Shown in pieces: positions 615 through 31,274 of a stretch of 37,228 bases of DNA (the stretch's first letter is position 1; each line of letters starts with the position of its first letter). The notes under the pieces were generated by a model. The model was not told the DNA's origin and made no database searches. It saw nothing but the letters and a program-made list of their open reading frames with translations. Source of the stretch: Octopus sinensis. Lineage: Eukaryota. Where the stretch lies: the NCBI RefSeq assembly GCF_006345805.1, contig NW_021832285.1:1-37228 (forward strand). Reading direction: 5' to 3'. The position numbers and the translations under genes are program-made.

Positions 615-686
615 GGAATTGGGTGATAACAACCTCAACGAAATCAAGACAGGAACATTGAAAAGTCTTCCAAGTTTAACAACTCT
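615..686 (+). CDS. LRR exon 1 (72 nt, phase 2-2): ELGDNNLNEIKTGTLKSLPSLTTL
   Basis: ttttatgtttcag acceptor, GTAAGT donor, 24-aa typical LRR consensus. Confidence 0.92.
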
Positions 687-726
687 GTAAGTTGAATCAG
701 TTTTTCTTTATAGTACTTCATTGATG

Positions 727-1108
727 GTGGAGGCGCAAAGGCCCAGTGGTTAGGGCAGCGGACTCGCGGTCATAGGATCGCGGTTTCGATTCCCAGACCG
801 GGCGCTGTGAGTGTTTATTGAGCGAAAACACCTAAAGCTCCACGAGGCTCCAGCAGGTGGTTGTGGTGATCCCTGCTGTACTCTTTCACCACAACCTTCT
901 CTCACTCTTACTTTCTGTTTCTGTTGTACCTGTATTTCAAGGGGCCGGCCTTGTCACTCTCTGTGTCACGCTGAATATCCCCGAGAACTACGTTAAGGGT
1001 ACACGTGTCTGTGGAGTGCTCAGCCACTTACACGTTAATTTCACGAGCAGGCTGTTCCGTTGATCGGATCAACCGGAACCCTCATCGTCGTAACCGACGG
1101 AGTGCTTC
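727..1108 (+). mobile_element. tRNA-like SINE family C
   Basis: A/B-box-like head (tggcccagtggttagg..ggtttcgattccc); TSD tacttcattgatg at 714-726 and 1109-1121; four copies in window. Confidence 0.9.
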
Positions 1109-1309
1109 TACTTCATTGATGACATATCTCTAAATATGTAATGCCTTCATCTCCTCCATTTGAAGCTCTCTCGCTTGCCTTTCTTTATAGTATTAAATGT
1201 TAAATGATTGCGTCTTCGCTATTGTTTATCTCAATGATATTTTGACAAAGAGCAAGTCAGTGGAGAGACACTTCGAAGGTATTGAAAAAGTATTCGGAAA
1301 AATAAATAG

Positions 1310-2139
1310 GTGTAGGAGTGGCTGTGTGGTAAGTAGCTTGGCGGCGAGCTGGCAGAAACGTTAGCACGCCGGGCGAAATGCGTAGCCGTATTTCGTCTGC
1401 CTTTACATTCTGAGTTCAAATTCCACCGAGGTCGACTTTGCCTTTCATCCTTTCGGGGTCGATTAAATAAGTACCAGTTACGTACTGGAGTCGATGTAAT
1501 CGATTTAATCCGTTTGTCTGTCCTTGTTTGTCCATTCTGTGTTTAGCCCCTTGTGGGCAGTAAAGAAAGAGGTAAGTAGCTTGCTTACCAACCACATGGT
1601 TCTGGGTTCAGTCCCACTGCGTGGAATCTTGGGTAAGTGTCTTCTAGTATAGCCTCGGGCCGACCAATGCCTTGTGAGTGGATTTGGTAGACGGAAACTG
1701 AAAGAAGCCCATCATATATATAGGCATAGGAGTGGCTGTGTTGTAAGCAGCTTGCTTACCAACCACATGGTTCTGGGTTCAGTCCCACTGCGTGGCATCT
1801 TGGGCAAGTGTCTTCCGCTATAGCCTCGGGCCGACCAATGCCTTGTGAGTGGATTTGGTAGACGGAAACTGAAAGAAGCCTGTCGTATATATGTGTATAT
1901 ATGTATATGTGTATGTGTATGTATATGTTTGTGTGTCTGTGTTTGTCCCCCTAGCATTGCTTGATAACCGATGCTGGTGTGTTTACGTCCCCGTCACTTA
2001 GCGGTTCGGCAAAAAGAGACCGATAGAATAAGTACTGGGCTTACAAAGAATAAGTCCCGGGGTCGAGTTTCTCGACTAAAGGCGGTGCTCCAGCATGGCC
2101 ACAGTCAAATGACCGTAACAAGTAAAAGAGTAAAAGAGA
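1310..2139 (+). mobile_element. Two tandem SINE family B copies; the first is truncated and interrupted by a SINE-A
   Basis: ggagtggctgtgtggtaagtagc head, ggttcagtcccac B-box-like motif, internal TA/TG microsatellite, aaaagag tail. Confidence 0.88.
1341..1570 (+). mobile_element. SINE family A nested in SINE-B
   Basis: 13-bp TSD ggtaagtagcttg at 1328-1340 and 1571-1583. Confidence 0.9.
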
Positions 2140-2140
2140 A

Positions 2141-2910
2141 TACAGGTTTAGATTAGCAGAGGCACAATGTGAATTTTTGATGAAATAAAATCAAACAGCT
2201 CGGTCAAGTAATCGACAAAAGGGGGCGAAACCAGACCCTTCAAGTGCGACGACAATACGGAATATGCTTTCCCTAATAAACGTCAAATTGTTACAAGCAT
2301 TTTTAGATTGGTAATCTACTATCGAGTATATATCTCAAACGTACACAACATAAGTGCTCCACTGAACGAGCTGTTAAAAACGGATACCAAATGGTTTGTG
2401 GAGGCGCAATGGCCCAGTGGTTAGGTGTTTCGCTCATAAACACACACATCACCCTGTCTGAGATTAGAACCTGCGATCCCTCGACCGCGAGTCCGCTGCT
2501 CTAACCACTAAGCCATGTGCCGCCGCATTATATATGGCATAAAAAATTCCGCAGCTTTATACATGTTGGATGGTGTAGACTACAAACAAACCATCACCCA
2601 TTGCTAACGAGTTTTGGATCCAAGAAAGGCATTCCAGTACATTCAGCAAATGGGTTGCAGCGATGAGGCACCATATTATTAAACTACGACTTTGCAATGG
2701 AATATTTACCTTCGAAAACGTTAGGACAAGTTGACGGCCTAAACAAGTTAATACCCAGAAATGGTGGACCATTTGAGGACGCAGTAATAGCATCCTTAAG
2801 AGCCGAAGGGGAAATTAAACACATAACGTGGAACATTGTACAAGTGTTATCAATAACTCTGTAGGAGACGAAGTGATACGCATCGAAAGTTAATTTTATT
2901 AATGGAAGGA
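2141..2910 (+). mobile_element. Degenerate Ty3/Gypsy pol fragment (RT C-terminus to RNase H), interrupted by SINE heads at 2398-2521
   Basis: frameshifted translation YRFRLAEAQCEFL..LGQVIDKRG..PDP..LLQAFL..APLNELLK..KKFRSF..TNHHPLL..GSKKGIP..LQR*GTILLNYDF. Confidence 0.85.
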
Positions 2911-3093
2911 AAAATCTTTGTGGTCACCTAGTGAGAAGGAGAAGATAGTCAAAGACTATATAATATACATTCAACAATATAAAGAATGGCCATAATAGGC
3001 CATTCGACTCACTAGACAGAGCAGCCAAACTCAAACCGCTAAATAGTTGTAATTCTGAAATTGAAAGAGAAATAAAAACATTTATCCTTTTCA

Positions 3094-3188
3094 TCTCTGG
3101 ACTATGCATTGTTTCGACAAACTTTCGTAAACAAATTAATTAAATTAAATTAAATTTATTTACAACTGGCGTGTCTCATCAGCAGAGA
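3094..3188 (-). ncRNA. Type I minimal hammerhead ribozyme, Penelope-like-element style
   Basis: minus strand reads UCUCUG-CUGAUGA-GACA[long AT-rich hairpin]UGUC-GAAA-C-AAUGCAUA-G-UC-CAGAGA: intact core, 6-bp stem I, GUC cleavage triplet, palindromic loop 3. Confidence 0.8.
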
Positions 3189-3656
3189 ATCCGAGGACGA
3201 GTAATGGTTTTATTTCTCTTTCAATTTCAGAATTACAACTATTTAGCGGTTTGAGTTTGGCTGCTCTTTCTAGTGAGTTGAATGGCCTATTATGGCCATT
3301 CCTTATATTTTCTTTAGGTGACCACAAAGATTTTTTCGCCCCCTGTTTGATTTTTTTCATCAAAAATTCACATTTTTCCTCTGCTAATCTAAACCCGTAT
3401 TCTCTTTTACTTTTTCTCTTTTACTCTTTTACTTGTTTCAGTCATTTGACTGTGGCCATGCTGGAGGACCGCCTTTAGTCGAGCCCAGTACTTATTCTAT
3501 CGGTCTCTTTTTGCCGAACCGCTAAGTTATAGGTTCGGTAAGAAAAAAAACACACCAACAGATAAACATATGGAACATGCGACTGCGTACTGATGTATGC
3601 CCAAAAGGTAATGATATTGGAGACACTATAAAAAAGAATTTTGAAAGAATTCCACA

Positions 3657-3930: not shown

Positions 3931-4064
3931 CTTTTCATCATTATCATCATCATCATCGTAATCTCTCTATGTCTTCAATCATCCAGTTGTTTAGCCATAA
4001 TATTTAATGTTCAGTCACAGATCTGTTCCATAGAAGTTGTTCTTAACTCAATTTTATGTTGCAG

Positions 4065-4136
4065 GTCATTGTGGGGGAATGCTATCAAAGAAATCAGTGC
4101 AGAAACCTTCCAAAATCTTAAAAGTTTATCAACTCT
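4065..4136 (+). CDS. LRR exon 2: SLWGNAIKEISAETFQNLKSLSTL
   Basis: ttttatgttgcag acceptor, GTAAGT donor, 72 nt, LRR consensus. Confidence 0.93.
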
Positions 4137-4194
4137 GTAAGTCGAATCAGTCTTGTTTATGGTATATCATTCACGACAGATTTCTAAATATTCG

Positions 4195-4195
4195 T

Positions 4196-4226
<31 letters not shown>

Positions 4227-4318
4227 TTCATCATCATCATCATCATCATAATCATCATCATCATCAAATTATCATCATCATCATCATCATCATTAAATTC
4301 ATCATCATCATCATCAAA

Positions 4319-4349
<31 letters not shown>

Positions 4350-4612
4350 ACATCATCATCATCATCATCATCATCATTATCATCATCATCATCATCAAAT
4401 TCATCATCATCATCATCATCATAATCATCATCATCATCAAATTCATCATCATCATCATCATCATCATTAAATTCATCATCATCATCATCAAATTCATCAT
4501 CATCATCATCATCATCATTAAATTCATCATCATCATCATCATCATCATTAAATTCATCATCATCATCATCATCATCATCAAATTCATCATCATCATCATC
4601 ATCATCATTAAA

Positions 4613-4657
<45 letters not shown>

Positions 4658-4715
4658 TTCATCATCATCATCATCATCATCATCATTAAATTCATCATCA
4701 TCATCATCATCAAAT

Positions 4716-4746
<31 letters not shown>

Positions 4747-4770
4747 CCTCATCATCAAATTCATCATCAG
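4195..4770. repeat. (CAT)n microsatellite punctuated periodically by AAATT
   Basis: direct inspection. Confidence 0.95.
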
Positions 4771-4884
4771 CCTTCATCTACAATCCGTCTATTCCATCAT
4801 CTAATCGTTTAGCCGTAATATTTAGAATTCTGTCACAGAATTCTGTTCGTTAAAAGTTGTCTTTCACTCAATTTTATGTTCCAG

Positions 4885-4956
4885 GAATTTGCGGAATAAT
4901 ATTATCGCGGAGATCAAACCAGACACCTTCCAAAGTCTTTCCAGATTAAAGATTCT
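4885..4956 (+). CDS. LRR exon 3: NLRNNIIAEIKPDTFQSLSRLKIL
   Basis: ttttatgttccag acceptor, GTAAGT donor, 72 nt, LRR consensus. Confidence 0.93.
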
Positions 4957-5104
4957 GTAAGTTGAATCAGCTTTTTTTTTTCAAAGGTTTCTCATTCACG
5001 ATAGATTTCCAAATATGTAATGACTTTATTTTAAGATCTGTCACACTTCTTGGCCTATGGCTATTCGTCTCACACCCGAGCTATTTAATTGGCCAACATT
5101 GACG

Positions 5105-5124
5105 CCATCATCATAATAACCACC

Positions 5125-5158
<34 letters not shown>

Positions 5159-5164
5159 TCATCG

Positions 5165-5198
<34 letters not shown>

Positions 5199-5363
5199 AC
5201 TTCACCACCACCACCACCATCATCATCACCATCATCATCGTCATCATCATTATCATCATCGTCATCATACTTCACCACCACCACCACCACCACCACCATC
5301 ACTATCATCATCATCATCGTCATCATCATCGTCATCATACTTCACCACCACCACCAGCACCAC

Positions 5364-5395
<32 letters not shown>

Positions 5396-5515
5396 CCATT
5401 ATCATCATCGTCATCGTCATCGTCATCGTCATCATCATCATACACCACCACCACCACCACCACCACCACCAAAACCATCACCACCACCACCACTACCACC
5501 AAAACCATCACCACC

Positions 5516-5549
<34 letters not shown>

Positions 5550-5570
5550 TCAATCATCATCATCATCATC
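5105..5570. repeat. Compound CAT/CAC microsatellite
   Basis: direct inspection. Confidence 0.95.
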
Positions 5571-5835
5571 ATCATCATCTTTATCGTCCTTATTTGTTAT
5601 CTTTTTCATTCCATCATCAACATCGTCCATCGCCATAAAACACCCCGACCAGATGAACAATCTTCAACGTAATCATCATCATCATCATCATCGTCGACAG
5701 AAACTTGAATATCCTCAAAGGCACACCCATCATCACTATATACACGCTAAGCCCCGTGATTATAGCAATATTCTCCTTTTACTACACCCCCCACCATCAT
5801 CAGAGACATAGTATAACTGTCATCAGTGCTACTAC

Positions 5836-7355
5836 CTATTTCTTTACTACCCACAAGGGGCTGAACACAGAGGGGACAAACAAGGACAGACACACGAATT
5901 AAGTCGATTGTATCGACCCCAGTGCGTAACTGGTACTTAATTTATCGACCCCGAAAAGATGAAAGGCAAAGTCGACCTCGGCGGAATTTGAACTCAGAAC
6001 GCAACGGCAGAAGAAATACCTATTCTTTACTACCCACAAGAGGCTAAACACAGAGAGGACAAACAAGGACAGACACACGAATTAAGTCGATTGTATCGAC
6101 CCCAGTGCGTAACTGGTACTTATTTAATCGACCCCGAAAGGATGAAAGGCAAAGTCGACCTCGGCGGAATTTGAACTCAGAACGCAGCGGCAGAGGAAAT
6201 ACCTGTTTCTTTACTACCCACAAGAGGCTAAACACAGAGAGGACAAACAAGGACAGACACACGAATTAAGTCGATTGTATCGACCCCAGTGGGTAACTGG
6301 TACTTAATTTATTGACCCCAAAAGGATGAAAGGCAAAGTCGACCTCGGCGGAATTTGAACTCAGAACGCAACGGCAGAGGAAATACCTGTTTCTTTACTA
6401 CCCACAAGAGGCTAAACACAGAGAGGACAACCAAGGACAGACACACGAATTAAGTCGATTGTATCGACCCCAGTGGGTAACTGGTACTTAATTTATTGAC
6501 CCCAAAAGTATGAAAGGCAAAGTCGACCTCGGCGGAATTTGAACTCAGAACGCAACGGCAGACGAAATACCTGTTTCCTTATTACCCACAAGGGGCTAAA
6601 CACAGAGAGGACGAACAAGGACAGACACACGAATTAAGTCGATTGTATCGACCCTAGTGCGTAACTGGTACTTAATTTATTGACCCCAAAAGTATGAAAG
6701 GCAAAGTCGACCTCGGCGGAATTTGAACTCAGAACGTAACGGCAGACGAAATACCTGTTTCTTTACTACCCACAAGGGGCTAAACATAGAAGGGACAAAC
6801 AAGGACAGACAAACCGATTAAGTCGATTACATCGATCCCAGTGCGTAACTGGTACTTAATTTATCGACCCCGAAAGGATGAAAGGCAAAGTCGACCATGG
6901 CGGAATTTGAACTCAGAACGTAGCGGCAGACGAAATACCTATTTCTTTACTACCCACAAGAGGCTAAACACAGAGAGGACGAACAAGGACAGACACACGA
7001 ATTAAGTCGATTGTATCGACCCCAATGCGTACCTGGTACTTATTTAATCGAACCCGAAAGTATGAAAGGCAAAGTCGACCTCGGCGGAATTTGAACTCAG
7101 AACGTAACGGCAGACGAAATACCTATTTCTTTACTACCCACAACGGGCTAAACAGAGAGAGGACGAACAAGGACAGACACACGAATTAAGTCGATTTTAT
7201 CGACCCCAGTGCGTAACTGGTACTTATTTAATCGACCCCGAAAGGATGAAAGGCAAAGTCGACCTCGGCGGAATTTGAACTCAGAACGTAACGGCAGACG
7301 AAATACCGCTAAGCATTTCGCCCGGCGTGCTAACGTTTCTGCCAGCTCACCGCCT
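5836..7355 (-). mobile_element. SINE-A tandem array: one head + 8 bodies of ~184 bp
   Basis: junctions at 5833, 6017, 6200, 6384, 6568, 6752, 6936, 7120, 7304; one flanking TSD tcatcagtgctactac (5820-5835) / tcatcaatgcttctac (7356-7371). Confidence 0.92.
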
Positions 7356-7896: not shown

Positions 7897-7957
7897 TTAA
7901 TATTCCATCACAAATCTGTCCCATACAAGTTCATCTTAGCTCAGTTTTATTTTACAG

Positions 7958-8029
7958 GAATTTGGGTGGTAACAATATCAAAGAAATCAAAACAGGAACC
8001 TTCCAGCATCTTACTCGTTTAATATATCT
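7958..8029 (+). CDS. LRR exon 4: NLGGNNIKEIKTGTFQHLTRLIYL
   Basis: ttttattttacag acceptor, GTAAGT donor, 72 nt, LRR consensus. Confidence 0.93.
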
Positions 8030-8108
8030 GTAAGTTGAATCAGTCTTGTTTATAATATTTCATTCACGATAATTTTCTAAATATGTAATATTTTCCCGTA
8101 CTTCATTT

Positions 8109-9478: not shown

Positions 9479-9627
9479 TTAATTTTCATCATTATCTTCA
9501 TCATATTCATCATACTCGTAATCTTCTTTCCCTCTCTTCCACAATCTAATTGTTTAGCCATGATATTTAATATTCAGTCACACATCTGTTCCATAAAAGT
9601 TCTTCTTAATTTAATTTTATGTTGCAG

Positions 9628-9699
9628 GTCAATTTGGGGTAATTATATCACAGAACTCAACGCAGAAACATTCCGAAACCTTTCCAGTTTATCAGATAT
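9628..9699 (+). CDS. LRR exon 5: SIWGNYITELNAETFRNLSSLSDI
   Basis: ttttatgttgcag acceptor, GTAAGT donor, 72 nt, LRR consensus. Confidence 0.92.
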
Positions 9700-9931
9700 G
9701 TAAGTTGAATAGGTCACTCATGGAGTCAGCCTAATTCGAAAATGGTATAATTTATTGGGTTACGGCTTTTAGGAGTAAAGTTGAAAAGGCGTGACACTCT
9801 GACACACAGACATTCTTATTTGTTATATTGTAGATAGATTTCTAAGTGTGTAATACCTTCCTATATTCCCTTTTGAGCTTTCTCACCAGTTTTTCTCTAT
9901 AATTTCACTCTCTCTGTCTCTGTCTGTCTGA

Positions 9932-12176: not shown

Positions 12177-12248
12177 ATATTTGAGGAACAACCGAATACA
12201 AAACTTTGAGGATGGCACCTTCTTATTCCTTCCCAGTTTAACTAAGAT
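12177..12248 (+). CDS. LRR exon 6: YLRNNRIQNFEDGTFLFLPSLTKI
   Basis: tttcattcttccag acceptor, GTATGT donor, 72 nt, LRR consensus. Confidence 0.92.
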
Positions 12249-16012: not shown

Positions 16013-16182
16013 TGACCTCAAAGAAAATAGAGACATGAGGTGTGGATGTCACCTGCCAGCCTTGGTAAATTATGTGAACAGAACGTTCAACATAGATTTG
16101 AATGTCCAGGGCGAGTGTCAGACAGATCCAGGCAACAACCAAAACAAAATTATACCTATAATGGAATTCTCGCAATGTCAAA
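16013..16182 (+). CDS. LRRCT exon: DLKENRDMRCGCHLPALVNYVNRTFNIDLNVQGECQTDPGNNQNKIIPIMEFSQCQ
   Basis: ttataattgcag acceptor, GTTAGT donor; xLxxN..CxCxL..C..C four-Cys LRR C-cap pattern; phase 2 in, phase 1 out. Confidence 0.88.
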
Positions 16183-19846: not shown

Positions 19847-19852
19847 ATGATG

Positions 19853-19901
<49 letters not shown>

Positions 19902-20066: not shown

Positions 20067-20109
<43 letters not shown>

Positions 20110-20156
20110 TGATGATGATGATGATAATAATAATAATAATGAATAATAATAATAAT
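19847..20156. repeat. (AAT/GAT)n microsatellite
   Basis: direct inspection. Confidence 0.95.
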
Positions 20157-21035: not shown

Positions 21036-21568
21036 AATAATAATAATAATAATAATAGTAGTAATAATAATAATAATAATAATAATAATGATAACAATAA
21101 TAATAATAATAGTAGTAGTAGTAGCAGTAATAATAATAATATAATAATAATAATAATAGTAGTAATAATATAAATAATAATAATAATAATGATATTAATA
21201 GTAGTAATAATAATAATAGCAATGATAATAATAATAGTAGTAGTAGTAATAATAATAATAATAATAATAATAATATTAGTAGTAGTAGTAGTAATAATAA
21301 TAATAATGATAATAATAATAATAATAATAATAATAAAATAATAATAATAGTAATAATAATAATAATAATAATAATGATATTAATAGTAGTAATAATAATA
21401 ATAGCAATGATAATAATAATAGTAGTAGTAGTAGTAATAATAATAATAATAATAATAATAATATTAGTAGTAGTAGTAGTAATAATAATAATAATGATAA
21501 TAATAATAATAATAATAATAATATAATAATAATAATAATAACAATGATGATGATAATGATAATAATTA
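21036..21568. repeat. (AAT/AGT)n microsatellite
   Basis: direct inspection. Confidence 0.95.
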
Positions 21569-21611
21569 TACGTTAGGCTCCTAAATATCTGTATTTAATT
21601 ATATTGCGTAG

Positions 21612-21703
21612 ATTACTCGTTATTTCAACGGAATTTGCAATGTCAGACATGTTCACGGATGACGTGCAGCGCTTCAGATGTAAGAAGCTGTCCCGAAGCA
21701 GAG
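21612..21703 (+). CDS. Ly6/uPAR domain N-half: (N)YSLFQRNLQCQTCSRMTCSASDVRSCPEAE
   Basis: attgcgtag acceptor, GAG|GTAAAC donor; LxCxxC start typical of LU domains; phases fit both neighbours. Confidence 0.82.
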
Positions 21704-23270: not shown

Positions 23271-24529
23271 CATAGGATATGAACGGTGAGCAATGACCAA
23301 AAGGCATTGGAAGGGATGAGAAAGGGTAAGTGGTATGAAAACATCCAGGTCCAAGGTGTAGAAGCTACAGTCTTAGAAGTCAGAGGGGGAAGTACATTTG
23401 GGGTCTAGAGCTAGGAAAGGTTTGACGAGCAGCTTCATACCAAACTGTCAAGTGAAGTTTAGAAGGATGTCATCCAGGGCATCTGCTTTCTGCCATGAAG
23501 CTTTTCACACACACACACACACCAGTGCATGGTAGGGTATCACTGATGAACTACAATTTGCGGAAGAACTAATTAAATGGGGGCAATACTAAATCTCTGA
23601 ACGAGATGTAAACAATAACCGGTCGACAACGTAAAGAATACTTGCCATCTCAATATGGCTAACCACTAAGGGTGGGTGTTACTGTAGCTTTTAGCCCCAG
23701 GAGAACATCGTCTCCAGCTGGCTTTAGACACACTTTAGACACATTTTCTTGAGTTCTTTGTATTTTGTTTGGAACAGTAAATTTCTCAAGTGCTTCAACA
23801 AAAATGTTTGCCTCTTCAGCATTTCATTTTCAGAATGAAGCTACGTTGAGGTGTATTGTTGTCTTCCTTTATGTGAGCAGGTTAAAAGCGAAAGTTTGAT
23901 AATCAGATTTATATTCCACCATTAGGTGTTATTTCAGTGTCAGTTATCTGTGTATTTATTTTAGCATTGTCCTGTTATGGGTATTGCCTCCATCATTTAC
24001 TGCCTGTTTTTGTGTTTCATTCTGTGTGACATTGCTACTGATTTTCATTGTATTTCAATGAAGAGTAGTTACAATAAACTACATCCTACTGTACAAGACC
24101 GAACTAGATAGGAAAACTTTATCAAAAAGGTACAGTATGGCTAGTATTCTTTACGTTAATTAAATGGGATTGTCCATGTAATTTGAAGTCAAAATCTATC
24201 TTATAGACATTTTAAAAAATCAGAAAGAAGGGAGATAACTTCAATATCATCTGATCAAAAACTTTGGAAGCATAGTCCGTTGCTCAGTGACATCAGATAG
24301 CAAGATTCGCAGTGGTGGCCACGAGTGGAATCAGGATCACTGAACGGCATACTCTGATGTTAAGTTTTAATGATCTTCAGATATTCTTATCTCCTAAGAT
24401 CTTTCTATTTCAACAATTAAATTTGAAAGTATGGGCAGTCGTCCTTAAAATCACTGGACCTGAACGTTGCACAAAATTGGTCTGAAAGTAACAGCTTCCT
24501 ACTGCGAAAGGGCTGTCCTCAAGCTAGTG

Positions 24530-24727
24530 CAGTGGTTTTCAACCAGGGTTCCGCCAGTACAGTCCAGGGGTTCCGCAAGAAGTTACAAAACTGCTAAAAC
24601 CGGCAGTAATTTTTAATTCTCCTGCACAGATATGTGTGCATAAGACAAATTATTGCACAGGGGGTTCCCCGAGCCAGTGAAATGTTTCCTTGGGGTTCCG
24701 CTCCAGCAAAACGTTTGAAAAGCACTG
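24530..24727. mobile_element. hAT (Charlie-like) MITE, 198 bp
   Basis: TIRs cagtggttttcaa / ttgaaaagcactg (12/13); 8-bp TSD agctagtg at 24522-24529 and 24728-24735. Confidence 0.9.
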
Positions 24728-24984
24728 AGCTAGTGGTTGTGTATGTCACAACGGGTACTGGACGGTTCGACTTCTCCTGATCTCTGGGAGCTTCCTTGAT
24801 TTTTACAAGGGAAATTTCGAGCTGAATTTTAGACACAAGACAGGGCTGGGTAAATGTAACGGAACGAAGAAGTTACAGAGTGGAAACATCTTTTTTGTAT
24901 ATAATCATATATTTTCATTTTTATTTCCATGACTTGAGTAGTTAATTTCGACCCTTTATTTTGATCATTATCTTTTATGAAGGA

Positions 24985-25365
24985 CTAGCAGTATCGCCCG
25001 GCGTTGCTCAGGTTTGTAAGGGAAATAACTATAAAGCATTTTCAGAGAGTTATAGCCAAAAAATAGCAAAAAAATGGAAAAAAAATTATGGTAAATTTTT
25101 TTTGAGTTAAAAAAGGTCGAGTTGCGTCCCCTAGACAGTCTGTGGTTTGTGTTTCTGATTCTCGACCCCATGTCGAATTTATCGATTTTTTTCAGAACTG
25201 GGGGAACTTTTCAAAATTTTCGCTGCGTTAGTTTTGAATTATGACATTGGGCTATGTGTGTGTCAAGTTTCATCAGAATCGGTTGAAAGCCGTGGTCAGG
25301 GTGAGGGTACAACCAAACAGACACACAGAAACACATACAGACAAACTGCCGTTTATATAGAGAGA
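24985..25365 (-). mobile_element. Non-autonomous Helitron (variant 2)
   Basis: minus strand A|TC..hairpin..CTAG|T termini; near-identical to 32750-33121. Confidence 0.8.
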
Positions 25366-25500
25366 TTACGGTGTGCTTGTTGAATGGAGCTTGCAATCCT
25401 GACTTCGTACATTTTGCGCGAAAAATTCACAGTACAAGTTCTCCGACAAAAATCTTTGGCTGAATTATACGATTCTTACAGCTATTTGTCATTTTGTGTA

Positions 25501-25885
25501 GTGGAGGCGCAATGGCCCAGTGGTTAGGGCAGCGGACTCGCGGTCATAGGATCGCGGTTTCGATTCCCAGACCGGGCGTTGTGAGTGTTTATTGAGCGAA
25601 AACACCTAAAGCTCCACGCGGCTGCGGCAGGGGATGGTGGTGATCCCTGCTGTACTCTTTCACCACAACTTTCTCTCACTCTTACTTCCTGTTTCTCTTG
25701 TACCTGTATTTCAAGGGGCCGGCCTTGTCACTCTCTGTGTCACGCTGAATATCCCCGAGAACTACGTTAAGGGTACACGTGTCCGTGGAGTGCTCAGCCA
25801 CTTACACGTTAATTTCACGAGCAGGCTGTTCCGTTGATTCGGATCAACCGGAACCCTCGTCGTCGTAACCGACGGAGTGCTTCCA
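25501..25885 (+). mobile_element. SINE family C
   Basis: TSD tgtcattttgtgt at 25487-25499 and 25886-25898. Confidence 0.9.
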
Positions 25886-26235
25886 TGTCATTTTGTGTGT
25901 GTGTGTGAGTGTTTATGTGACATGAGAACGTTGTATATTATCGGCATTTATAACACATCATTTAGCCGTTCAAGAATTTGGACCTGGAGATCTCCATTTC
26001 CCCCGATTTCGAGAGCCACCTCCCAGTGGTGTCGGGCGTCAACGAAGAGGCCTCGACTACAACAAGACGACCAAAGTTTTTTTTTTCCAAGGTCCGGGGT
26101 CTCCTGCCCCTAAGCCCTAGACCATCACCTAATCACCCTTACCCGTCTTGTTGCTTAACGAACAACAACACATCATTTAAATGCAGTAAATATCAATAAA
26201 TTTTACAGGGGATTATCTATGCGCTTATCTTTCAT

Positions 26236-26754
26236 CATTCGCTAGACAAAACTTGCCTCTCTACTCTCACTTTCCTCTTCAAGTGATACTTGAAGAAGTT
26301 GATGAGAGATTGACCAGAGAGGAAAGTGTTTGTCTCTAATCCTTTCAGGCGCGTCCACCAGATACATTCTTTCGCCATAGCCACAAGGATGATAAAAATA
26401 GCTCTTCCTTCCCGTTTGAAGGAAGGAGGCGTGACAATATTGACGATAGACTCGGCTGATAAACCGACACGTCCCACACGTGACAGCAGTTGTTCGACAT
26501 AAGCCCACAGGTCGGAAATTGTTGGACACTGCACGAGTTCGTGCAGAACGGTTTCGTTGCTCTGACCGCATTTCGGGCACGTCGGCCCCGTGTTTCTCGA
26601 GCCATGTCTATAGAGCTTATCCCGAACGGTAGCGCTTCTCAATAACACTACCAGGCCAGGGATCTCTGGAAGTTGTCCATAGGTCCCGGCCCAAAAGTCG
26701 TATTGAACAGGCGGGTCAGGTATTCCTCGTCGACGCCCAGATTCACTCCGAGAT
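26236..26754 (-). mobile_element. Tx1/L1-like LINE ORF2 C-terminal fragment (zf-RVT region)
   Basis: VRDKLYRHG..CPKCGQSNETVLHELVQCP..IWWTR; reverse complement of 28098-28616. Confidence 0.82.
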
Positions 26755-26857
26755 TTCCTTCTTACCTTTTTGATAATTTTAAGAGCAATGATTGGACGTT
26801 TTTTTATCATCTTAAATATCTCCTGTGTTGTTATGATTTCTGTGTTTATCGTTACAG

Positions 26858-27041
26858 CCTGTTTGCCGCCGCGAATTATCATTGGACGGTGTTACATTGA
26901 AGTTTGAAAAATCCTGCAGCACATACAGAAAATGTCTTGAAGATATCAGAAACAATACCTTTACCTGCAACAAATGGACCAGTGGTACCTCTTGCGTTGC
27001 TTGTTGCACCGGAAACTTATGCAACAAGAACAATTTCACTG
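26858..27041 (+). CDS. Ly6/uPAR domain C-half: PVCRRELSLDGVTLKFEKSCSTYRKCLEDIRNNTFTCNKWTSGTSCVACCTGNLCNKNNFT
   Basis: ttatcgttacag acceptor, G|GTAAGT donor; CCxxxxCN three-finger signature. Confidence 0.92.
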
Positions 27042-27078
27042 GTAAGTGTTGTTTACTTTTTGATATAAATATACCTGA

Positions 27079-27296
27079 TTTATTTACTACCCACAAGAGG
27101 GGACAAATAAGGACAGACAAACGGATTAAGTCGATTATATCGACCCCAGTGCTTAACTGGTACTTAATTTATCAACCCCGAAAGAATGAAAGGCCGAAGT
27201 CGACCTCGGCGGAATTTGAACTCAGAACATAGCGGCAGACGAAATACGGCAACGCATTATGCCCGGCGTGCTAACGTTTCTGCCAGCTCGCCGCCT
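27079..27296 (-). mobile_element. SINE-A monomer
   Basis: 25-bp duplication ttgatataaatatacctgatttatt at 27060-27084 and 27296-27320. Confidence 0.88.
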
Positions 27297-27381
27297 TGAT
27301 ATAAATATACCTGATTTATTAAAGATGTGTCGTCAAAAACATTAAAATAGCAAATGTATAATATTTTACCCACATACATAT

Positions 27382-27420
<39 letters not shown>

Positions 27421-27577
27421 TGTGTGAATAAAAATCCATAGTAAATTTATCGACATCGCGAATTCAACTCACTCTCCATAACCGACAAAAAAATTTAATC
27501 GGTTTTCAAAACTTACTGAGTTCTCATCAAACGTGTATTAATAACATAAGGAATCCCAGAGAAGCAAATAACCATTA

Positions 27578-27790
27578 TTATTTCTTTACTACCCACGAGG
27601 GGCAAAACACAGAGAGGACAAACAAGGACAGACAAACGGATTAAGTCGATTATATCGACTCCAGTGCGTAACTGGTACTTATTTAATCGACCCCGAAAGG
27701 ATGAAAGGCAAAGTCGACCTCGGCGGAATTTGAACTCACAACGTAACGGCAGACGAAATACCGCTAACGTGTTAACGTTTCTGCCAGCTC
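27578..27790 (-). mobile_element. SINE-A monomer with deleted head
   Basis: match to other copies. Confidence 0.85.
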
Positions 27791-27987
27791 GACATTCTAT
27801 ATACATAACAAATGCAGAAGTTTTACAGAACTTGAGCTACTAATTTTTAATTTTTTTTCCAAGCCCCTTTTAACTCTGTCGTCCTTCTGCGGTTAGCAAC
27901 AAACAAAATGTAATCGTGTGGTGTCCATGCGTTTGTCAGTTGTAAATGAATCCGCTGTCAGCTTCCTTCATCTCAATAAACCAACAG

Positions 27988-29031
27988 CGAGTGTCGCGCT
28001 GCTCTCAAGCAACCATGCCGTCCCGAGTCGACCTTGAGCGACTTTAACACAACCAAAACATTCTATAGGGGATTAGTGGAGGGGAGGTATGACGACGATC
28101 TCGGAGTGAACCTGGGCGTCGACGAGGAATACCTGACCCGCCTGTTCAAGACGACTTTCGGGCCGGGACCTATGGACAACTTCCAGAGATCCCTGGCTTG
28201 GCAGTGTTATTGAGAAGCGCTACCGTTCGGGATAAGCTCTATAGACATGGCTCGAGAAACACGGGGCCGACGTGCCCGAAATGCGGTCAGAGCAACGAAA
28301 CCGTTCTGCACGCACTCGCGCAGTGTCCAACAATTTCCGACCTGTGGGCTTATGTTGAACAACTGCTGTCACGTGTGGGACGAGTCGGTTTATCAGCCGA
28401 GTCTATCGTCAATATTGTCACGCCTCCTTCCTTCAAACGGGAAGGAAGAGCTATTTTCACCATCCTTGTGGATATGACGAAAGAATGTATCTGGTGGACG
28501 CGCCTGAAAGGATTAGAGACAAACACTTTCCTCTCTGGTCAATCTCTCATCAACTTCTTCAAGTATCACTTGAAGAGGAAAGTGAGAGTAGAGAGGCAAG
28601 TTTTGTCTAGCGAATGTTTAAAAAAAAGATGGGTGAATGTAGCAAGGATGGCACGTATGAATGACGAAGCCACCTTGAGCATAATCCTATGAACCCGGAA
28701 AAATTTAAAACAGAGTTACTTACTTGCTAATAAATGTGTTAACATGTGACATTATCGACCGAGGTTACCGTGGTCTTTTCCGTAGTCTTTTCTTTCCATG
28801 GATAAGCCTTATCTGCTTTTCTCTTTACACTTTACATCATGACATTTCTATGATACACGATCCCTATTGATCGTTGTTTTTTCTCTCTCTTTTTACGATC
28901 CCTTTTGATCGAAAACCTACCCCGCTTTTAGTTTTTTCTTTTCCTTTTTCTTTAATCCCCTCCCCTCCAAGAAAAGCTCTCCTTTGTAATTTATCCCCTC
29001 TGTGTTCAGCCCTGTGTGGCTAATAAAGAAA
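27988..29031 (+). mobile_element. 5'-truncated Tx1/L1-like LINE: ORF2 end, stop at 28692, 3' UTR
   Basis: LAWQCY*EALP/VRDKL..CPKCGQSNETVLHALAQCP zinc-knuckle (CX2CX8HX4C); pyrimidine-rich 3' UTR ending aataaagaaa. Confidence 0.82.
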
Positions 29032-29132
29032 CATATTATATAGATAATTATATTTATATCTTCATGGTATCTATGAGATGTCTCTCATTTATTAAAGCAA
29101 TGGTTCTTTTCTATTTTTATATCCTTCCATAG

Positions 29133-29209
29133 GTTCGAATAACTCCTTTGTATTTCATCTGATTTTCAATTCGATTTTGAAGAAGTCCAATGAAGACATA
29201 GCTAGAAGC
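29133..29209 (+). CDS. SEA-like domain exon a: (G)SNNSFVFHLIFNSILKKSNEDIARS
   Basis: long pyrimidine tract + ccatag acceptor, GTGAGT donor, phase 1-0. Confidence 0.82.
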
Positions 29210-29452
29210 GTGAGTAGTAATTTTCTCCTGCGCTTGCACGCACACACGCACGCACACATACATGGATATAGAGCTAACAGACGAGATCGAGAGATTCTCA
29301 GAATAGAAGAGACTTATCAGCGCTCGGATGATTTGATCCTACACTCCGAAGCCTTTAGCATGGCTCGGATCAGCGGGGTAAAGTGTGGGTATAAGGCGAA
29401 TTCAAGGGCAGCAGATTTGGAATCAATGATGCAAATGAACAAATAAAACAGA

Positions 29453-29487
<35 letters not shown>

Positions 29488-29812
29488 AATATGAGGGATA
29501 GTATAGGTGGTGCTTGGAGGATGGAATTAGGGGGTAAATGTGAGGAATAGTATAGGTGGCGCTTGGGTTAAAGAATAGATTATGAATTTTGGCATGAGGC
29601 GTGAAATTTCGGGTGTTAAGTCGATTACATCGACCGCAGTGACTAACTGGTACTTATTTTATCGACCTCGACAGGATGAAAGGCAAATTCGATCCCAGCG
29701 GCATTGGAACAGAAAGCAAAGTCGGAACAACTGCTGCTACGCATTTTTACCGGCGCGGTAACGATTGTGTCAGTTTGTTGTGTTACACACAAATATAGAT
29801 ACGTGTGTGTAT

Positions 29813-29861
<49 letters not shown>

Positions 29862-29895
29862 AACTGTATTATATTCCTGTATAAATCTATTGCAG

Positions 29896-29948
29896 ATGGA
29901 GCATGAGTTATCATACTTGACAGGAACATTCGAAGTTGCGTATTGTGG
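29896..29948 (+). CDS. SEA-like domain exon b: MEHELSYLTGTFEVAYC(G)
   Basis: atctattgcag acceptor, GTAAGC donor, phase 0-2. Confidence 0.82.
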
Positions 29949-30269
29949 GTAAGCAAAATTAATACTTTTATTCAAATTTTGTTTATTTTTGGTGAAAATA
30001 TTCCCGTGTTTATTTTTGCTGTATTAAATATTACAATAAGAATTCTGTACCTGACATCCATAATACACAGGTTCATACGTTCAATGAAATGTTGAGCAGA
30101 CTAATGTAGATATATAGAGTACAAAACATGTGTGTGTGAATATATATGTAGATGCATAGGTTGTCGTCGTTGTCGTCATCAACACCATCATTACCAGCAC
30201 CAACACCACCACCACACCACCACCACCACCACCAGCACCCCCCATTATCATCATCATCATCATGATCCT

Positions 30270-30973
30270 CATTTCATGTGTTCTCTCGACTCTGGCATTG
30301 GTTCACCCTTTTGGGATAGACTTGCGACTGGTGACGAAAAATGAATCTTCTATCGAAATGTTAGACGTCGTAAACAGTGGCTTGGTAAGAGGGAAAAAGC
30401 TCAACCACAACCGAGAAGGGAACTTCATGGGAAAACGGTTCTTATCTCTATCTGGTGGGATTGCAAAGAAGTAATTCACTTTGAATTTTTACCACCTAAT
30501 ACAACAATCAATGCTGAAGTTTACTGTCAGCAATTAGAGCGTTTGAACCAAGCAAAAAATATAACACTGATTTAGTGAATCGAAAAGGTGTGATGTTTCA
30601 TCAGGACAATGCGCGACCTCACACTGCAAAGATCACATCACAAGTTCGAAGAGCTTGGTTGGGAAAAAATTCCTCATCCACCTTATTCTCCCGACCTTGC
30701 TCCTTCAGACTACCATTTGTTTCGTAGTTTACAGAATCATTTGGGGAACAAAACTTTCGCAAGCCAGGAGGAAGTCGAAACTGACATTTCAGAGTTCTTC
30801 GCATTGAAACCAAAAGAGTTTTACATTGATGGAATTAAAAAGCTTGTAAATAGATGGAAGGAAGTTATAGATAACCAGGGAAAGTACATTGATGATTAAA
30901 TTTCAATTAAATATAACATTTGATCACACTTTTCTTTATACAAAATTCGGACAGAACTTATGGGATGGCCTGA
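30270..30973 (+). pseudogene. Mariner (DD34D) transposase 3' fragment with right end
   Basis: LATGDEK*..HQDNARPH..HPPYSPDLAPSDYHLF motifs with a stop and frameshifts; ends before TA at 30974-30975. Confidence 0.92.
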
Positions 30974-31116
30974 TATAATGGTAGAATTTAGATTTTTGTT
31001 GTTAGAACAAGATCATTTCCATTAAAACTAGTTAGAGTCCCATATAAGTAAAAATTCTGGTGAGTGTCATTTAAACTAATTATATATTGTAATATCTTTT
31101 TAAAATCCTATTTCAG

Positions 31117-31274
31117 TTCCGAAAAGAATAGTGAGGTATTTACTATTAATTGCACAGTACCACGTACAATTACTAAGGACCAAATTTTTAAACAAGTTTC
31201 TGAAACTTTTAAGACATCACAGACTTTGCGTGATTTGGGATTGCAACAACGGAACACGGAGTTATTTGATGAAA
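31117..31274 (+). CDS. SEA-like domain exon c: SEKNSEVFTINCTVPRTITKDQIFKQVSETFKTSQTLRDLGLQQRNTELFDE
   Basis: cctatttcag acceptor, GTAAGT donor, phase 2-1; open frame. Confidence 0.82.

What the first reader, a model, noticed from the sequence alone, without database searches (positions are those of the whole stretch)
615..31274. Hidden gene with an unfamiliar domain order: LRR array-LRRCT-three-finger (Ly6/uPAR)-SEA-like
Seen: 12 small exons, not recovered as a gene by the ORF track, splice into a 388-codon open frame with matching phases, LRR and LRRCT motifs, a CCxxxxCN three-finger domain and an alpha/beta domain. Established: LRR ectodomains, LU domains and SEA domains each occur in cell-surface proteins. 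I do not recall a characterised protein that fuses LRRs directly to an LU domain. Inference: a lineage-specific receptor or adhesion ectodomain. The last exon ends in phase 1, so the gene continues; a TM, GPI or GAIN-7TM (adhesion GPCR) tail are all possible.
Basis: partly seen in the sequence, partly recalled or inferred. Interest (0 to 1): 0.85.

Follow-up and report, generated by a model that had tools for sequence, protein, structure and literature searches.

The report
Octopus adhesion-GPCR ectodomain gene fragment
The gene is already annotated, and it is the outer part of an adhesion G-protein-coupled receptor from a published octopus gene-family expansion, so it is a useful annotation refinement rather than a new kind of gene.

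Summary
Twelve + strand exons (615-31274) with canonical AG/GT sites join into 388 codons and end in phase 1. A 13th exon lies at 33152-33266.

The window is a whole 37,228-bp Octopus sinensis scaffold. NCBI already models this gene as "slit homolog 1 protein-like, partial", using 11 of the 12 exons plus the 13th.

Domain calls:
- **LRR and LRRCT:** supported.
- **Three-finger (LU) domain:** supported. A family profile hits human LYPD1/Lynx2 at E 7.5e-7, and the AlphaFold model matches Lynx2 at TM 0.71.
- **SEA-like domain:** supported more weakly, by a beta-alpha-beta-beta-alpha-beta model and by Pfam SEA hits in homologues only.
- **Exon 13:** starts a hormone-receptor (HormR) motif.

The scaffold ends about 1.2 kb before the next exon. 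In the collinear O. vulgaris locus, the rest of HormR, a GAIN/GPS domain (HL/T) and 7TM exons follow.

Full-length homologues with LRR-LU-SEA-HormR-GAIN-7TM occur in octopods, gastropods and a bivalve. Their 7TM is closest to ADGRG6/G2. The family is the octopus-specific "group 3" adhesion-GPCR expansion of Ritschard et al. 2019, which did not discuss the LU and SEA modules.

So this is a member of a known family with an under-described domain, of modest interest.

The parts
615..686 (+). LRR exon 1 (72 nt, phase 1-1), ELGDNNLNEIKTGTLKSLPSLTTL
   Evidence: Acceptor ttatgtttcag, donor gtaagt. 100% match to P0001 residues 1-24. Pfam LRR_8 E 8.7e-43 for the whole model.
4065..4136 (+). LRR exon 2 (72 nt)
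   Evidence: Canonical splice sites. P0001 residues 25-48, 100%.
4885..4956 (+). LRR exon 3 (72 nt)
   Evidence: Canonical splice sites. Its translation is present in the P0001 sequence.
7958..8029 (+). LRR exon 4 (72 nt)
   Evidence: Canonical splice sites. Its translation is present in the P0001 sequence.
9628..9699 (+). LRR exon 5 (72 nt).
   Evidence: Acceptor ttatgttgcag, donor gtaagttgaa, open in the shared phase. Its intron flanks are homologous to those of exons 1-4. It is absent from P0001. Whether mRNA includes it is untested.
12177..12248 (+). LRR exon 6 (72 nt), the last repeat before the cap
   Evidence: Paralogues align to it at about 56% identity.
16013..16182 (+). LRRCT cap exon (170 nt), with four Cys: CxC...C...C
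   Evidence: Splice sites shown. Paralogues align at E 1e-8 to 1e-12. The family profile A4 hits the C-terminal caps of TLR4 (E 2.8e-4), FLRT3, LGI1 and Slit.
21612..21703 (+). LU (three-finger) domain, N-terminal part (92 nt), LQCQTC...C...C
   Evidence: It is the only open AG..GT candidate in the right phase with at least 2 Cys. Paralogues align at 63-67% identity.
26858..27041 (+). LU domain, C-terminal part (184 nt), ending CCTGNLCN
   Evidence: The LU profile (A2) hits LYPD1 6zss at E 7.5e-7, and all 17 hits are three-finger proteins. The AlphaFold model has pLDDT 82.9. The Foldseek top 50 are all three-finger folds, with Lynx2 at TM 0.71.
29133..29209 (+). SEA-like domain, exon 1 of 3 (77 nt; beta1 and the start of alpha1)
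   Evidence: The orthologous O. vulgaris exon is 100% identical.
29896..29948 (+). SEA-like domain, exon 2 of 3 (53 nt; end of alpha1 and beta2)
31117..31274 (+). SEA-like domain, exon 3 of 3 (158 nt; beta3, alpha2, beta4). Ends in phase 1.
   Evidence: The AlphaFold model shows beta-alpha-beta-beta-alpha-beta with pLDDT 70-91. Pfam SEA is hit by the homologous segment of P0103 (E 5.5e-5 in the whole protein) and P0096. When the SEA-like segments are scanned alone, three of 12 family members hit it, best E 1.6e-6.
33152..33266 (+).
   Evidence: Acceptor tttgtttttcag, donor gttcgt. P0001 residues 365-402 match it, and paralogues align at 58-63% identity. Pfam HRM is sub-threshold in paralogues (E 0.003-0.02). 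The best PDB match is the ADGRG6 HormR at E 0.64.

Best explanation
The window holds the middle of one protein-coding gene: 13 exons and 426 codons, cut off at both ends by the scaffold. The gene encodes the extracellular region of an adhesion G-protein-coupled receptor (aGPCR). The part encoded here is at least six leucine-rich repeats, an LRRCT cap, one Ly6/uPAR-type three-finger (LU) domain with 12 cysteines (the LYPD1/Lynx2 pattern), a divergent and probably non-cleaving SEA-like alpha/beta domain, and the first half of a HormR motif. By orthology, the missing 3' part encodes the rest of HormR, a GAIN domain with an intact GPS site (HL/T followed by a TSFAIIM tethered-agonist-like sequence), and a secretin-type 7TM closest to ADGRG6/ADGRG2. 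The missing 5' part should encode a signal peptide, an LRRNT cap and possibly more LRRs. The proposed mechanism is inferred from what is established for aGPCRs. The distal LRR and LU modules bind a partner on another cell, in the matrix, or on the same membrane. The SEA-HormR-GAIN stalk transmits force or conformational change. Exposure of the tethered agonist after the GPS then activates the 7TM. The 72-nt, phase 1-1 LRR exons are cassettes. Each can be duplicated or skipped without breaking the reading frame, which gives a simple route to variable repeat number among paralogues and isoforms.
For: - **One gene:** there are 13 frame-compatible exons with canonical splice sites, and the RefSeq model P0001 comes from this same 37,228-bp scaffold.
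- **Domains:** LRR_8 scores E 8.7e-43. The LRRCT profile hits TLR4, FLRT3 and Slit caps. The LU profile hits LYPD1 at E 7.5e-7 end to end with the cysteines aligned, and every other hit is a three-finger protein. The LU model has pLDDT 82.9, and Foldseek returns only three-finger folds. The SEA-like model is beta-alpha-beta-beta-alpha-beta, and Pfam SEA is hit in aligned homologues.
- **The gene continues as an aGPCR:** the O. vulgaris locus L001 is collinear with the window at 97-99% DNA identity. The window's last base aligns to L001 position 16988, and the next coding exon starts at 18154. GAIN/GPS exons and then 7TM exons follow on the same strand. The O. vulgaris protein P0052 is near-identical over the window's exons 11-13 and then runs through HormR and GAIN to CSCNHLTSFAIIM.
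- **The whole architecture in one chain:** this is seen in P0088 and P0093 (Octopus), P0096 (Argonauta), P0100 (Nucella), P0103 (Haliotis) and P0105 (Dreissena), each with Pfam LRR, GPS and 7tm_2 except P0096, a partial model that ends just after the GPS. It is also seen in P0092, an uninterrupted 1155-codon ORF on a 4.2-kb contig of run SRR21372857, which suggests a transcript.
- **7TM affinity:** ADGRG6 scores E 1.3e-87 for the Haliotis member, and ADGRG2/G6 score E 1e-48 to 1e-52 for the Octopus member.
- **Literature:** cluster-mates of P0088 and P0093 are listed in 'group 3', the octopus-specific aGPCR expansion, which is reported as co-localised, under positive selection and enriched in axial nerve cord, suckers and skin.
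Against: - No GAIN, GPS or 7TM sequence lies inside the window, so the aGPCR assignment for this locus rests on orthology to a very close sister species and on paralogues.
- No RNA evidence for O. sinensis was available. The RefSeq model stops by read-through 12 codons after exon 13 and skips exon 5.
- Many paralogue models in the databases are short (160-560 aa) and lack a 7TM. Some loci may therefore make soluble products or be fragments.
- The window's own SEA-like and HormR segments do not reach any Pfam threshold.
- Ligand, signalling and tissue expression of this particular gene are untested.
Confidence: 0.87

Rival explanations
1. The locus, or its main transcript, encodes a soluble or otherwise non-7TM LRR-LU-SEA protein. 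That would be a secreted decoy or adhesion protein that ends shortly after exon 13, rather than a full receptor.
For: The RefSeq model P0001 reads through the exon 13 donor and stops after 12 more codons. Several paralogue models have a signal peptide and a stop codon but no 7TM, for example P0002, P0004 and P0009. aGPCR genes in other animals are known to give truncated isoforms; a paper on an aGPCR producing 1TM isoforms by intron retention appears in the reference list seen.
Against: The exon 13 donor leaves 'TG', which would be completed to Cys exactly where paralogues have the conserved HormR cysteine. The orthologous O. vulgaris exons for the second half of HormR, GAIN, GPS and 7TM follow in order on the same strand. 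The short models look like products of scaffold ends and of tandem paralogues confusing the gene predictor.
Confidence: 0.08
2. These are several separate small genes lying head to tail: an LRR protein gene, a Ly6-like gene and an SEA-like gene.
For: Free-standing LU proteins are the norm for that domain. Introns between the domain blocks are long, at 4-5 kb.
Against: Phases match across every junction, and no start codon or signal peptide sits at the head of the LU or SEA blocks. The same order occurs in single polypeptides from five mollusc genera and in one intron-less contig. Paralogue models cross the same junctions.
Confidence: 0.02
3. It is a recently duplicated, unexpressed or decaying copy (a pseudogene) within a tandem paralogue cluster.
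For: The family is large and tandemly arranged: many paralogues sit on one O. vulgaris chromosome record. Introns are full of transposon fragments, including a 544-nt inverted repeat bracketing exon 9.
Against: All 13 exons are open, and all splice sites and all conserved cysteines are intact. The O. vulgaris orthologue keeps the same open exons. Selection could not be tested, because introns are as similar as exons (97-99%) between these two species.
Confidence: 0.03

Closest known systems
Octopus-specific class-B 'group 3' adhesion GPCR expansion (Ritschard et al. 2019, PMC6408891)
   Same: This appears to be the same gene family. Cluster-mates of homologues P0088 and P0093 (UniProt A0A0L8FLR8 and A0A0L8HDZ7) are listed as group 3. 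Both sources report LRR + GPS + 7TM, and one member has a C-terminal Death domain.
   Different: The paper classified by the 7TM and named only LRR and Death as extra domains. The LU, SEA-like and HormR modules were not described. One SUPERFAMILY 'snake toxin-like' (SSF57302) hit sits in its Table S3, and the main text does not mention it. The paper used O. bimaculoides and Callistoctopus minor, not this O. sinensis locus.
ADGRG6 (GPR126) and the ADGRG subfamily of vertebrate adhesion GPCRs
   Same: The membrane-proximal layout is the same: SEA, HormR, GAIN/GPS, 7TM. The 7TM/GAIN of family members is most similar to ADGRG6 and ADGRG2 among solved structures. The best, though weak, HormR match is the ADGRG6 HormR. 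NCBI names many members 'adhesion GPCR G6-like'.
   Different: The distal end differs. ADGRG6 has CUB and pentraxin domains (my knowledge). This family has LRRs, LRRCT and an LU domain, and no CUB or pentraxin hit appears in the full-length members.
ADGRA2/ADGRA3 (GPR124/GPR125)
   Same: Both are aGPCRs with an N-terminal LRR block plus LRRCT, followed by HormR and GAIN. The precomputed Pfam GAIN_ADGRA3 (PF26588) hits many paralogues. One member is named 'adhesion GPCR A3' by NCBI.
   Different: ADGRA proteins have an Ig domain between LRRCT and HormR (my knowledge). Here that position is taken by LU + SEA-like, and no Ig hit was found. Among solved structures, the 7TM is closer to ADGRG proteins.
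LYPD1/Lynx2, LYPD6 and other Ly6/uPAR (LU) proteins
   Same: The fold and cysteine framework are shared: 12 Cys including the extra third-finger pair, and a C-terminal CCxxxxCN.
   Different: Known LU proteins are mostly small, GPI-anchored or secreted, single-domain or tandem-LU proteins (PMC7053344 and PMC4839075 abstracts). Here a single LU domain is an internal module of a multi-domain receptor, directly after an LRRCT.
Slit (the name NCBI gave the model)
   Same: Only the LRR/LRRCT similarity is shared.
   Different: No second LRR block, EGF, laminin-G or cystine-knot domain is present. The name comes from best-hit naming of a truncated LRR-rich fragment.

Membership tests
Adhesion GPCR (class B2) | GAIN domain with a GPS autoproteolysis motif immediately before the 7TM | tested here: met
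   This feature is not inside the window, because the scaffold ends first. It is met in the collinear O. vulgaris orthologue: P0052 has Pfam GPS, a weak GAIN_ADGRA3 hit and ...CSCNHL/TSFAIIM. It is also met in full-length homologues, with GPS at E 1e-11 to 1e-15.
Adhesion GPCR (class B2) | Secretin-type seven-transmembrane domain (Pfam 7tm_2) | tested here: met
   In the orthologous locus L001, a 7tm_2 gene fragment and TM-like ORFs lie 3-7 kb downstream of the GPS exon on the same strand. 7tm_2 scores E 1e-23 to 1e-52 in P0088, P0092, P0093, P0100, P0103 and P0105. It cannot be tested in the window itself.
ADGRG6 (GPR126) orthology group | N-terminal CUB and pentraxin domains | tested here: not met
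   There is no CUB or pentraxin hit in any full-length family member at E <= 0.1. LRRs and LU occupy the distal end.
ADGRG6 (GPR126) orthology group | SEA-HormR-GAIN-7TM core, with the 7TM most similar to ADGRG6 | tested here: met
   ADGRG6 is the top PDB match for P0103 (E 1.3e-87). ADGRG2 and ADGRG6 are the top aGPCR matches for P0088. The SEA and HormR evidence is weaker.
ADGRA (GPR124/125) | An Ig domain between LRRCT and HormR | tested here: not met
   No Ig-family Pfam hit was found. The interval is filled by LU + SEA-like.
Ly6/uPAR (LU, three-finger) domain | Cysteine framework with LxCxxC at the start and CCxxxxCN at the end | tested here: met
   There are 12 Cys, nine invariant and three more conserved in at least 90% of 18 diverse family members, with the pattern LQCQTC...CCTGNLCN. 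They align Cys for Cys with LYPD1.
Ly6/uPAR (LU, three-finger) domain | Significant sequence-profile similarity to known LU proteins | tested here: met
   Profile A2 against PDB sequences gives LYPD1 E 7.5e-7, LYPD6 E 0.003, SLURP1 E 0.04, then toxins, ActR1 and CD59. All 17 hits are three-finger proteins. The LU+SEA profile also finds a sea-cucumber protein whose repeats pass Pfam CD59 and Toxin_TOLIP. The window protein alone gives no Pfam UPAR_LY6 hit at E <= 1.
Ly6/uPAR (LU, three-finger) domain | Three-finger beta fold | tested here: met
   The AlphaFold2 model has pLDDT 82.9 and pTM 0.74. All Foldseek top 50 hits are three-finger folds. Lynx2 6zss scores TM 0.71/0.71 and rmsd 2.9 A over 86 columns. 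E-values are weak (0.04), as expected for an 85-residue domain.
SEA domain | Alpha/beta sandwich with beta-alpha-beta-beta-alpha-beta order | tested here: met
   The AlphaFold2 model has strands 95-105, 129-138, 141-151 and 183-187 and helices 112-123 and 156-175, with pLDDT 70-91. Foldseek returned only generic ferredoxin-like folds and no SEA entry in the top 50, so the fold class fits but is not specific.
SEA domain | Match to the Pfam SEA profile (PF01390) | tested here: inconclusive
   The window's copy gives no hit. In homologues, the Haliotis member P0103 scores E 5.5e-5 and 23.7 bits against a cut-off of 26.4, covering profile positions 2-100 of 106, and the Argonauta member scores E 0.013. 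Scanned as isolated segments, three of 12 family members hit SEA, best E 1.6e-6. The profile against PDB gives ADGRF1 SEA and MUC1 SEA only at E 0.2-0.7.
SEA domain | G/SVVV autoproteolysis motif in the beta2-beta3 turn | tested here: not met
   The turn reads YCG/SEKNSEVF here and is not conserved among paralogues or other molluscs. This SEA-like domain is probably not self-cleaving.
HormR (hormone receptor motif) | Match to Pfam HRM and the conserved Cys/Trp framework | tested here: inconclusive
   Only the N-terminal half is in the window. Pfam HRM scores E 0.003-0.02, below its cut-off, in P0105, P0009 and P0017. The family alignment conserves C, WP, C, AxR, C, W and C. The best PDB hit is the ADGRG6 HormR at E 0.64.
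LRR with LRRCT cap | LRR_8-type repeats followed by a four-Cys C-terminal cap | tested here: met
   LRR_8 scores E 8.7e-43. The cap profile hits the C-terminal caps of TLR4, Toll, FLRT3, LGI1 and Slit, with best E 2.8e-4.
Slit | Four LRR blocks followed by EGF repeats, a laminin-G domain and a C-terminal cystine knot | tested here: not met
   Only one LRR block is present, and there is no EGF, LamG or CTCK hit in the model or in full-length relatives.

The most novel reading that the evidence does not exclude
The built-in Lynx2-like LU domain may be more than another adhesion module. It could be a covalently attached modulator. One version is that it docks in cis on nicotinic-receptor-like channels, the class from which, as I recall, octopus sucker chemotactile receptors derive. 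Another is that it docks on the receptor's own 7TM/GAIN. Either way it would couple contact chemosensation or cholinergic signalling to aGPCR signalling in suckers and arm nerve cord. The LRR-cassette number would then tune partner specificity among the expanded paralogues. The leads are these. Free LU proteins act in cis on ion channels and, in a 2026 preprint, as a tethered GPCR ligand. The closest solved relative is Lynx2. The family is reported as enriched in suckers, skin and axial nerve cord.
Probability: 0.05. Interest if true: 0.75.

Novelty: new member of a known kind. Interest (0 to 1): 0.35.

Why it matters
For genome annotation, the RefSeq name 'slit homolog 1 protein-like, partial' is misleading. 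The locus is a scaffold-truncated adhesion GPCR of the octopus-expanded ADGRG-like family.

For receptor biology, the modest new point is that this family carries a Ly6/uPAR three-finger domain and a divergent SEA-like domain between the LRR cap and HormR. The family is mollusc-wide and is amplified in octopods. Pfam models miss both modules in the octopus copies, and the paper that described the expansion did not discuss them.

LU domains are protein binders that usually work as free, GPI-anchored modulators. Finding one fixed inside a mechanosensitive receptor gives a concrete handle, a small disulfide-rich module that can be expressed on its own, for finding ligands of an orphan receptor family linked to octopus suckers, skin and arm nerve cord.

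The 72-nt symmetric LRR exons with duplicated intron flanks also illustrate how ectodomain length can vary in such expansions.

Tried and rejected
- **Pfam on the window protein and octopus paralogues.** This found only LRR families and a sub-threshold HRM, with nothing for LU or SEA. Those two calls needed family profiles and structure prediction.
- **First AlphaFold run on LU+SEA together.** With 21 octopus-only sequences, the LU half came out unusable (pLDDT below 50), although the SEA half was good. A second run on the LU domain alone, with gastropod and bivalve sequences added, gave a confident model.
- **Foldseek with the LU+SEA model.** It returned only generic ferredoxin-like folds and no SEA structure in the top 50, so it cannot confirm SEA specifically.
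- **Profile of the SEA-like domain against PDB sequences.** SEA domains of ADGRF1 and MUC1 appear only at E 0.2-0.7. The top hit is a spurious low-score repeat match to a designed LRR protein.
- **Search for the exon after exon 13 inside the window (33267-37228).** Nothing was found. Comparison with O. vulgaris shows it would lie about 1.2 kb past the scaffold end.
- **Exon versus intron conservation between the window and O. vulgaris, as a test for selection.** This was not informative, because both are 97-99% identical.
- **Candidate exons at 30236-30470 and 30709-30845.** These were rejected because they lie in a mariner transposase remnant.
- **Rfam and tRNA scans of the window.** No hits.
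- **A glycoprotein-hormone-receptor/LGR-type gene.** I considered this early because it also has one LRR per 72-nt exon. I dropped it once the LU, GAIN and 7tm_2 evidence came in.

Full report
**Observation.** On the + strand there are six 72-nt exons at 615-686, 4065-4136, 4885-4956, 7958-8029, 9628-9699 and 12177-12248. Each encodes one leucine-rich repeat. Each starts one base into a codon and ends two bases into the next, and each has a pyrimidine-rich AG acceptor and a GT donor, gtaagt for the first five and gtatgt for the sixth. They are followed in compatible phase by six more exons:
- 16013-16182, a four-cysteine cap.
- 21612-21703 and 26858-27041, a 12-cysteine domain starting LQCQTC and ending CCTGNLCN.
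- 29133-29209, 29896-29948 and 31117-31274, an alpha/beta domain.

Joined, the 12 exons give 1166 nt. I also found a 13th exon, 33152-33266, whose first two bases complete that spare base to ATG (Met).

**What the window is.** A protein search returned a 414-residue RefSeq protein whose only contig is 37,228 bases long, the same length as the window. It is 'slit homolog 1 protein-like, partial [Octopus sinensis]' (P0001; E 9.7e-164). It skips 9628-9699, and it ends by reading 12 codons through the exon 13 donor. So the gene is real and already annotated. It looked 'hidden' only because a stop-to-stop ORF list cannot see an intron-rich animal gene. About two dozen paralogues from O. sinensis, O. 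bimaculoides and O. vulgaris match at E 1e-30 to 1e-95, and they align exon by exon with breaks at the same junctions.

**Domain tests.**
- **LRR.** Pfam LRR_8 scores E 8.7e-43.
- **LRRCT.** A profile of the cap from ten family members hits the C-terminal caps of TLR4 (E 2.8e-4), Toll, FLRT3, LGI1, Slit and GPIb-alpha.
- **LU, sequence evidence.** Pfam finds nothing in the octopus proteins. A profile of 18 family members, including gastropod and bivalve sequences, hits human LYPD1/Lynx2 at E 7.5e-7 across the whole domain with the cysteines in register. It then hits LYPD6, SLURP1, candoxin, a muscarinic toxin-like protein, activin receptor 1 and CD59. All 17 hits at E <= 10 are three-finger proteins.
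- **LU, structural evidence.** An AlphaFold2 model of the window's LU segment has pLDDT 82.9.
- **SEA-like.** The model is a confident beta-alpha-beta-beta-alpha-beta sandwich with pLDDT 70-91. Foldseek gives only generic ferredoxin-like folds, and the window's copy has no Pfam SEA hit. Aligned homologues do hit it. The Haliotis member scores E 5.5e-5 in the whole protein, covering profile positions 2-100 of 106. Scanned as isolated segments, three of 12 family members hit SEA, best E 1.6e-6. I accept 'SEA-like, divergent'. The G/SVVV self-cleavage motif is absent.
- **HormR.** Exon 13 carries C...FxWPxTxxG...C...AxR, the first half of a hormone-receptor motif. Support is weak: Pfam HRM scores E 0.003-0.02 in relatives, and the best PDB hit is the ADGRG6 HormR at E 0.64.

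**Where the gene goes next.** Several paralogues continue past HormR into sequence with Pfam GAIN_ADGRA3, GPS and 7tm_2 hits. The O. vulgaris protein P0052 is near-identical to the window over exons 11-13. It then runs through the rest of HormR and a GAIN domain to CSCNHL/TSFAIIM.

Its genomic locus (L001, chromosome record OX597842.1) is collinear with the window at 97-99% DNA identity. It contains the LU exon 9 and exons 10-13 in the same order. The window's last base aligns to L001 position 16988, and the next coding exon begins at 18154. The scaffold therefore stops about 1.2 kb short of it. GAIN/GPS exons follow, and then ORFs encoding TM1-TM3-like helices plus a called 7tm_2 gene fragment on the same strand.

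**Family and distribution.** A HMMER scan with the LU+SEA profile over 1.84 billion representative proteins found only 43 proteins at E <= 0.001. The long ones are single chains with LRR, LRRCT, LU, SEA-like, HormR, GAIN/GPS and 7tm_2. They come from O. bimaculoides, O. vulgaris, Argonauta hians, Nucella lapillus, Haliotis and Dreissena polymorpha.

One further hit is an uninterrupted 1155-codon ORF on a 4.2-kb contig from sequencing run SRR21372857. That contig looks like a transcript (inference from the lack of introns), and its organism is unknown to me.

The architecture is therefore mollusc-wide. Among solved structures, the GAIN-7TM part is closest to ADGRG6 and ADGRG2, which explains NCBI's 'adhesion GPCR G6-like' names.

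Ritschard et al. 2019 (PMC6408891) described an octopus-specific class-B 'group 3' expansion of adhesion GPCRs. They report GPS and 7TM domains, LRRs in 5 of 22 sequences, a Death domain in one, co-localised genes, positive selection, and enrichment in axial nerve cord, suckers and skin. UniProt entries that cluster with my homologues P0088 and P0093 are listed in that group. P0088 indeed has the Death domain. Their supplementary InterProScan table contains one SUPERFAMILY SSF57302 (snake toxin-like) hit in a group 3 protein. The main text lists only the LRR and Death domains as additional domains and does not mention it. My literature searches found no paper describing an LU domain in an adhesion GPCR.

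**Mechanism.**
- *Shown:* the domain order, the intact reading frame, and the GPS motif and tethered-agonist-like TSFAIIM in the orthologue.
- *Inferred from established aGPCR biology:* the LRR and LU modules bind a partner. The SEA-HormR-GAIN stalk transmits force or conformational change. The tethered agonist then activates the 7TM.
- *Supporting detail:* LRR exons 1-5 share about 50 nt of homologous intron on each side. They therefore arose by tandem duplication of exon-plus-flank units. Being 72 nt and symmetric in phase, they can be added or skipped without a frameshift. The RefSeq model's omission of exon 5 may reflect this, or may be a prediction choice.

**Rivals.**
- *A soluble isoform ending after exon 13:* possible but less likely. 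The donor leaves TG, which would be completed to the conserved HormR cysteine.
- *Separate small genes:* essentially excluded by phase continuity and by single-chain homologues.
- *A pseudogene:* not supported, since every exon, splice site and conserved cysteine is intact. Selection could not be measured because the only orthologue at hand is too similar.

**Verdict.** The domain interpretation is correct, and the GAIN-7TM option is the right one. However, the gene is annotated, it belongs to a published family, and the architecture is not peculiar to one lineage. What remains new is small. A Lynx2-like LU module and a divergent SEA-like module are built into this ADGRG-like receptor family and have gone unremarked.

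Noticed in passing
window 26224-26767 and 28085-28628: A 544-nt inverted repeat, 96% complementary with arms 1317 nt apart, brackets exon 9 (26858-27041). Both arms carry a retrotransposon ORF fragment with a weak zf-RVT hit (E 2e-4). The stretch containing both arms (window 23741-29566) aligns collinearly with O. vulgaris at 97.8% identity. Pairing of the arms in pre-mRNA could favour skipping or back-splicing of this 184-nt exon, but this is untested.
   Followed up: partly
window 9628-9699: This is a perfectly spliceable 72-nt LRR exon that the RefSeq model omits. It is either an alternatively spliced cassette or a prediction choice.
   Followed up: partly
window 565-736, 4015-4186, 4835-5006, 7908-8079, 9578-9749: LRR exons 1-5 share homologous intron sequence for about 50 nt on both sides, whereas exon 6 does not. 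This is a signature of tandem duplication of exon-plus-flank units.
   Followed up: yes
window 30345-30896: A mariner-type transposase remnant lies in the intron between exons 11 and 12. Pfam Transposase_1 scores E 1e-24 for 30345-30572. The following ORF (30594-30896) looks to me like the C-terminal end of the same transposase but has no Pfam hit. It generates false exon candidates.
   Followed up: yes
window 5833-7307, 11006-11374, 32141-32513, 35349-37088: There are tandem arrays of a 171-184-bp unit, with 8 and 10 copies in the two large arrays at 94-96% identity. They give long spurious ORFs (FTTHKGLNTE...). Arrays of similar units are present in the O. vulgaris locus. No tRNA or Rfam match was found.
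   Followed up: partly
window 4195-4769, 5106-5579, 18497-19013, 19844-20156, 21036-21570, 34337-34762; also 103-510: The introns hold long trinucleotide arrays (TCA, CAT, ATT, ATA, AAT) of 300-575 bp, and there is a C-rich tract at the scaffold start that reads as poly-proline. Both produce long low-complexity ORFs on both strands.
   Followed up: no
window 33267-33302: The RefSeq protein ends WFVSIVLFHIKL. This is a read-through of the exon 13 donor (gttcgt) into the intron, probably because the scaffold lacks the next exon.
   Followed up: yes
homologue P0088 (O. bimaculoides), residues 1203-1277: One family member has a cytoplasmic Death domain after the 7TM (Pfam E 3.3e-6). To my knowledge that is an unusual tail for an adhesion GPCR. 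It is also listed in Ritschard et al.'s table.
   Followed up: partly
paralogues P0016 and P0020; P0009, P0010 and P0017: Some paralogue models contain two LU domains in tandem, or a second SEA-like domain after HormR. Whether these are true architectures or fusions of neighbouring tandem paralogues by the gene predictor was not resolved.
   Followed up: no
O. vulgaris chromosome record of 34,562,309 bases (OX597842.1): At least seven family members (P0046, P0048, P0049, P0052, P0054, P0060, P0062) have a longest contig of that same length, which points to the same chromosome record. This is consistent with a tandem cluster.
   Followed up: no
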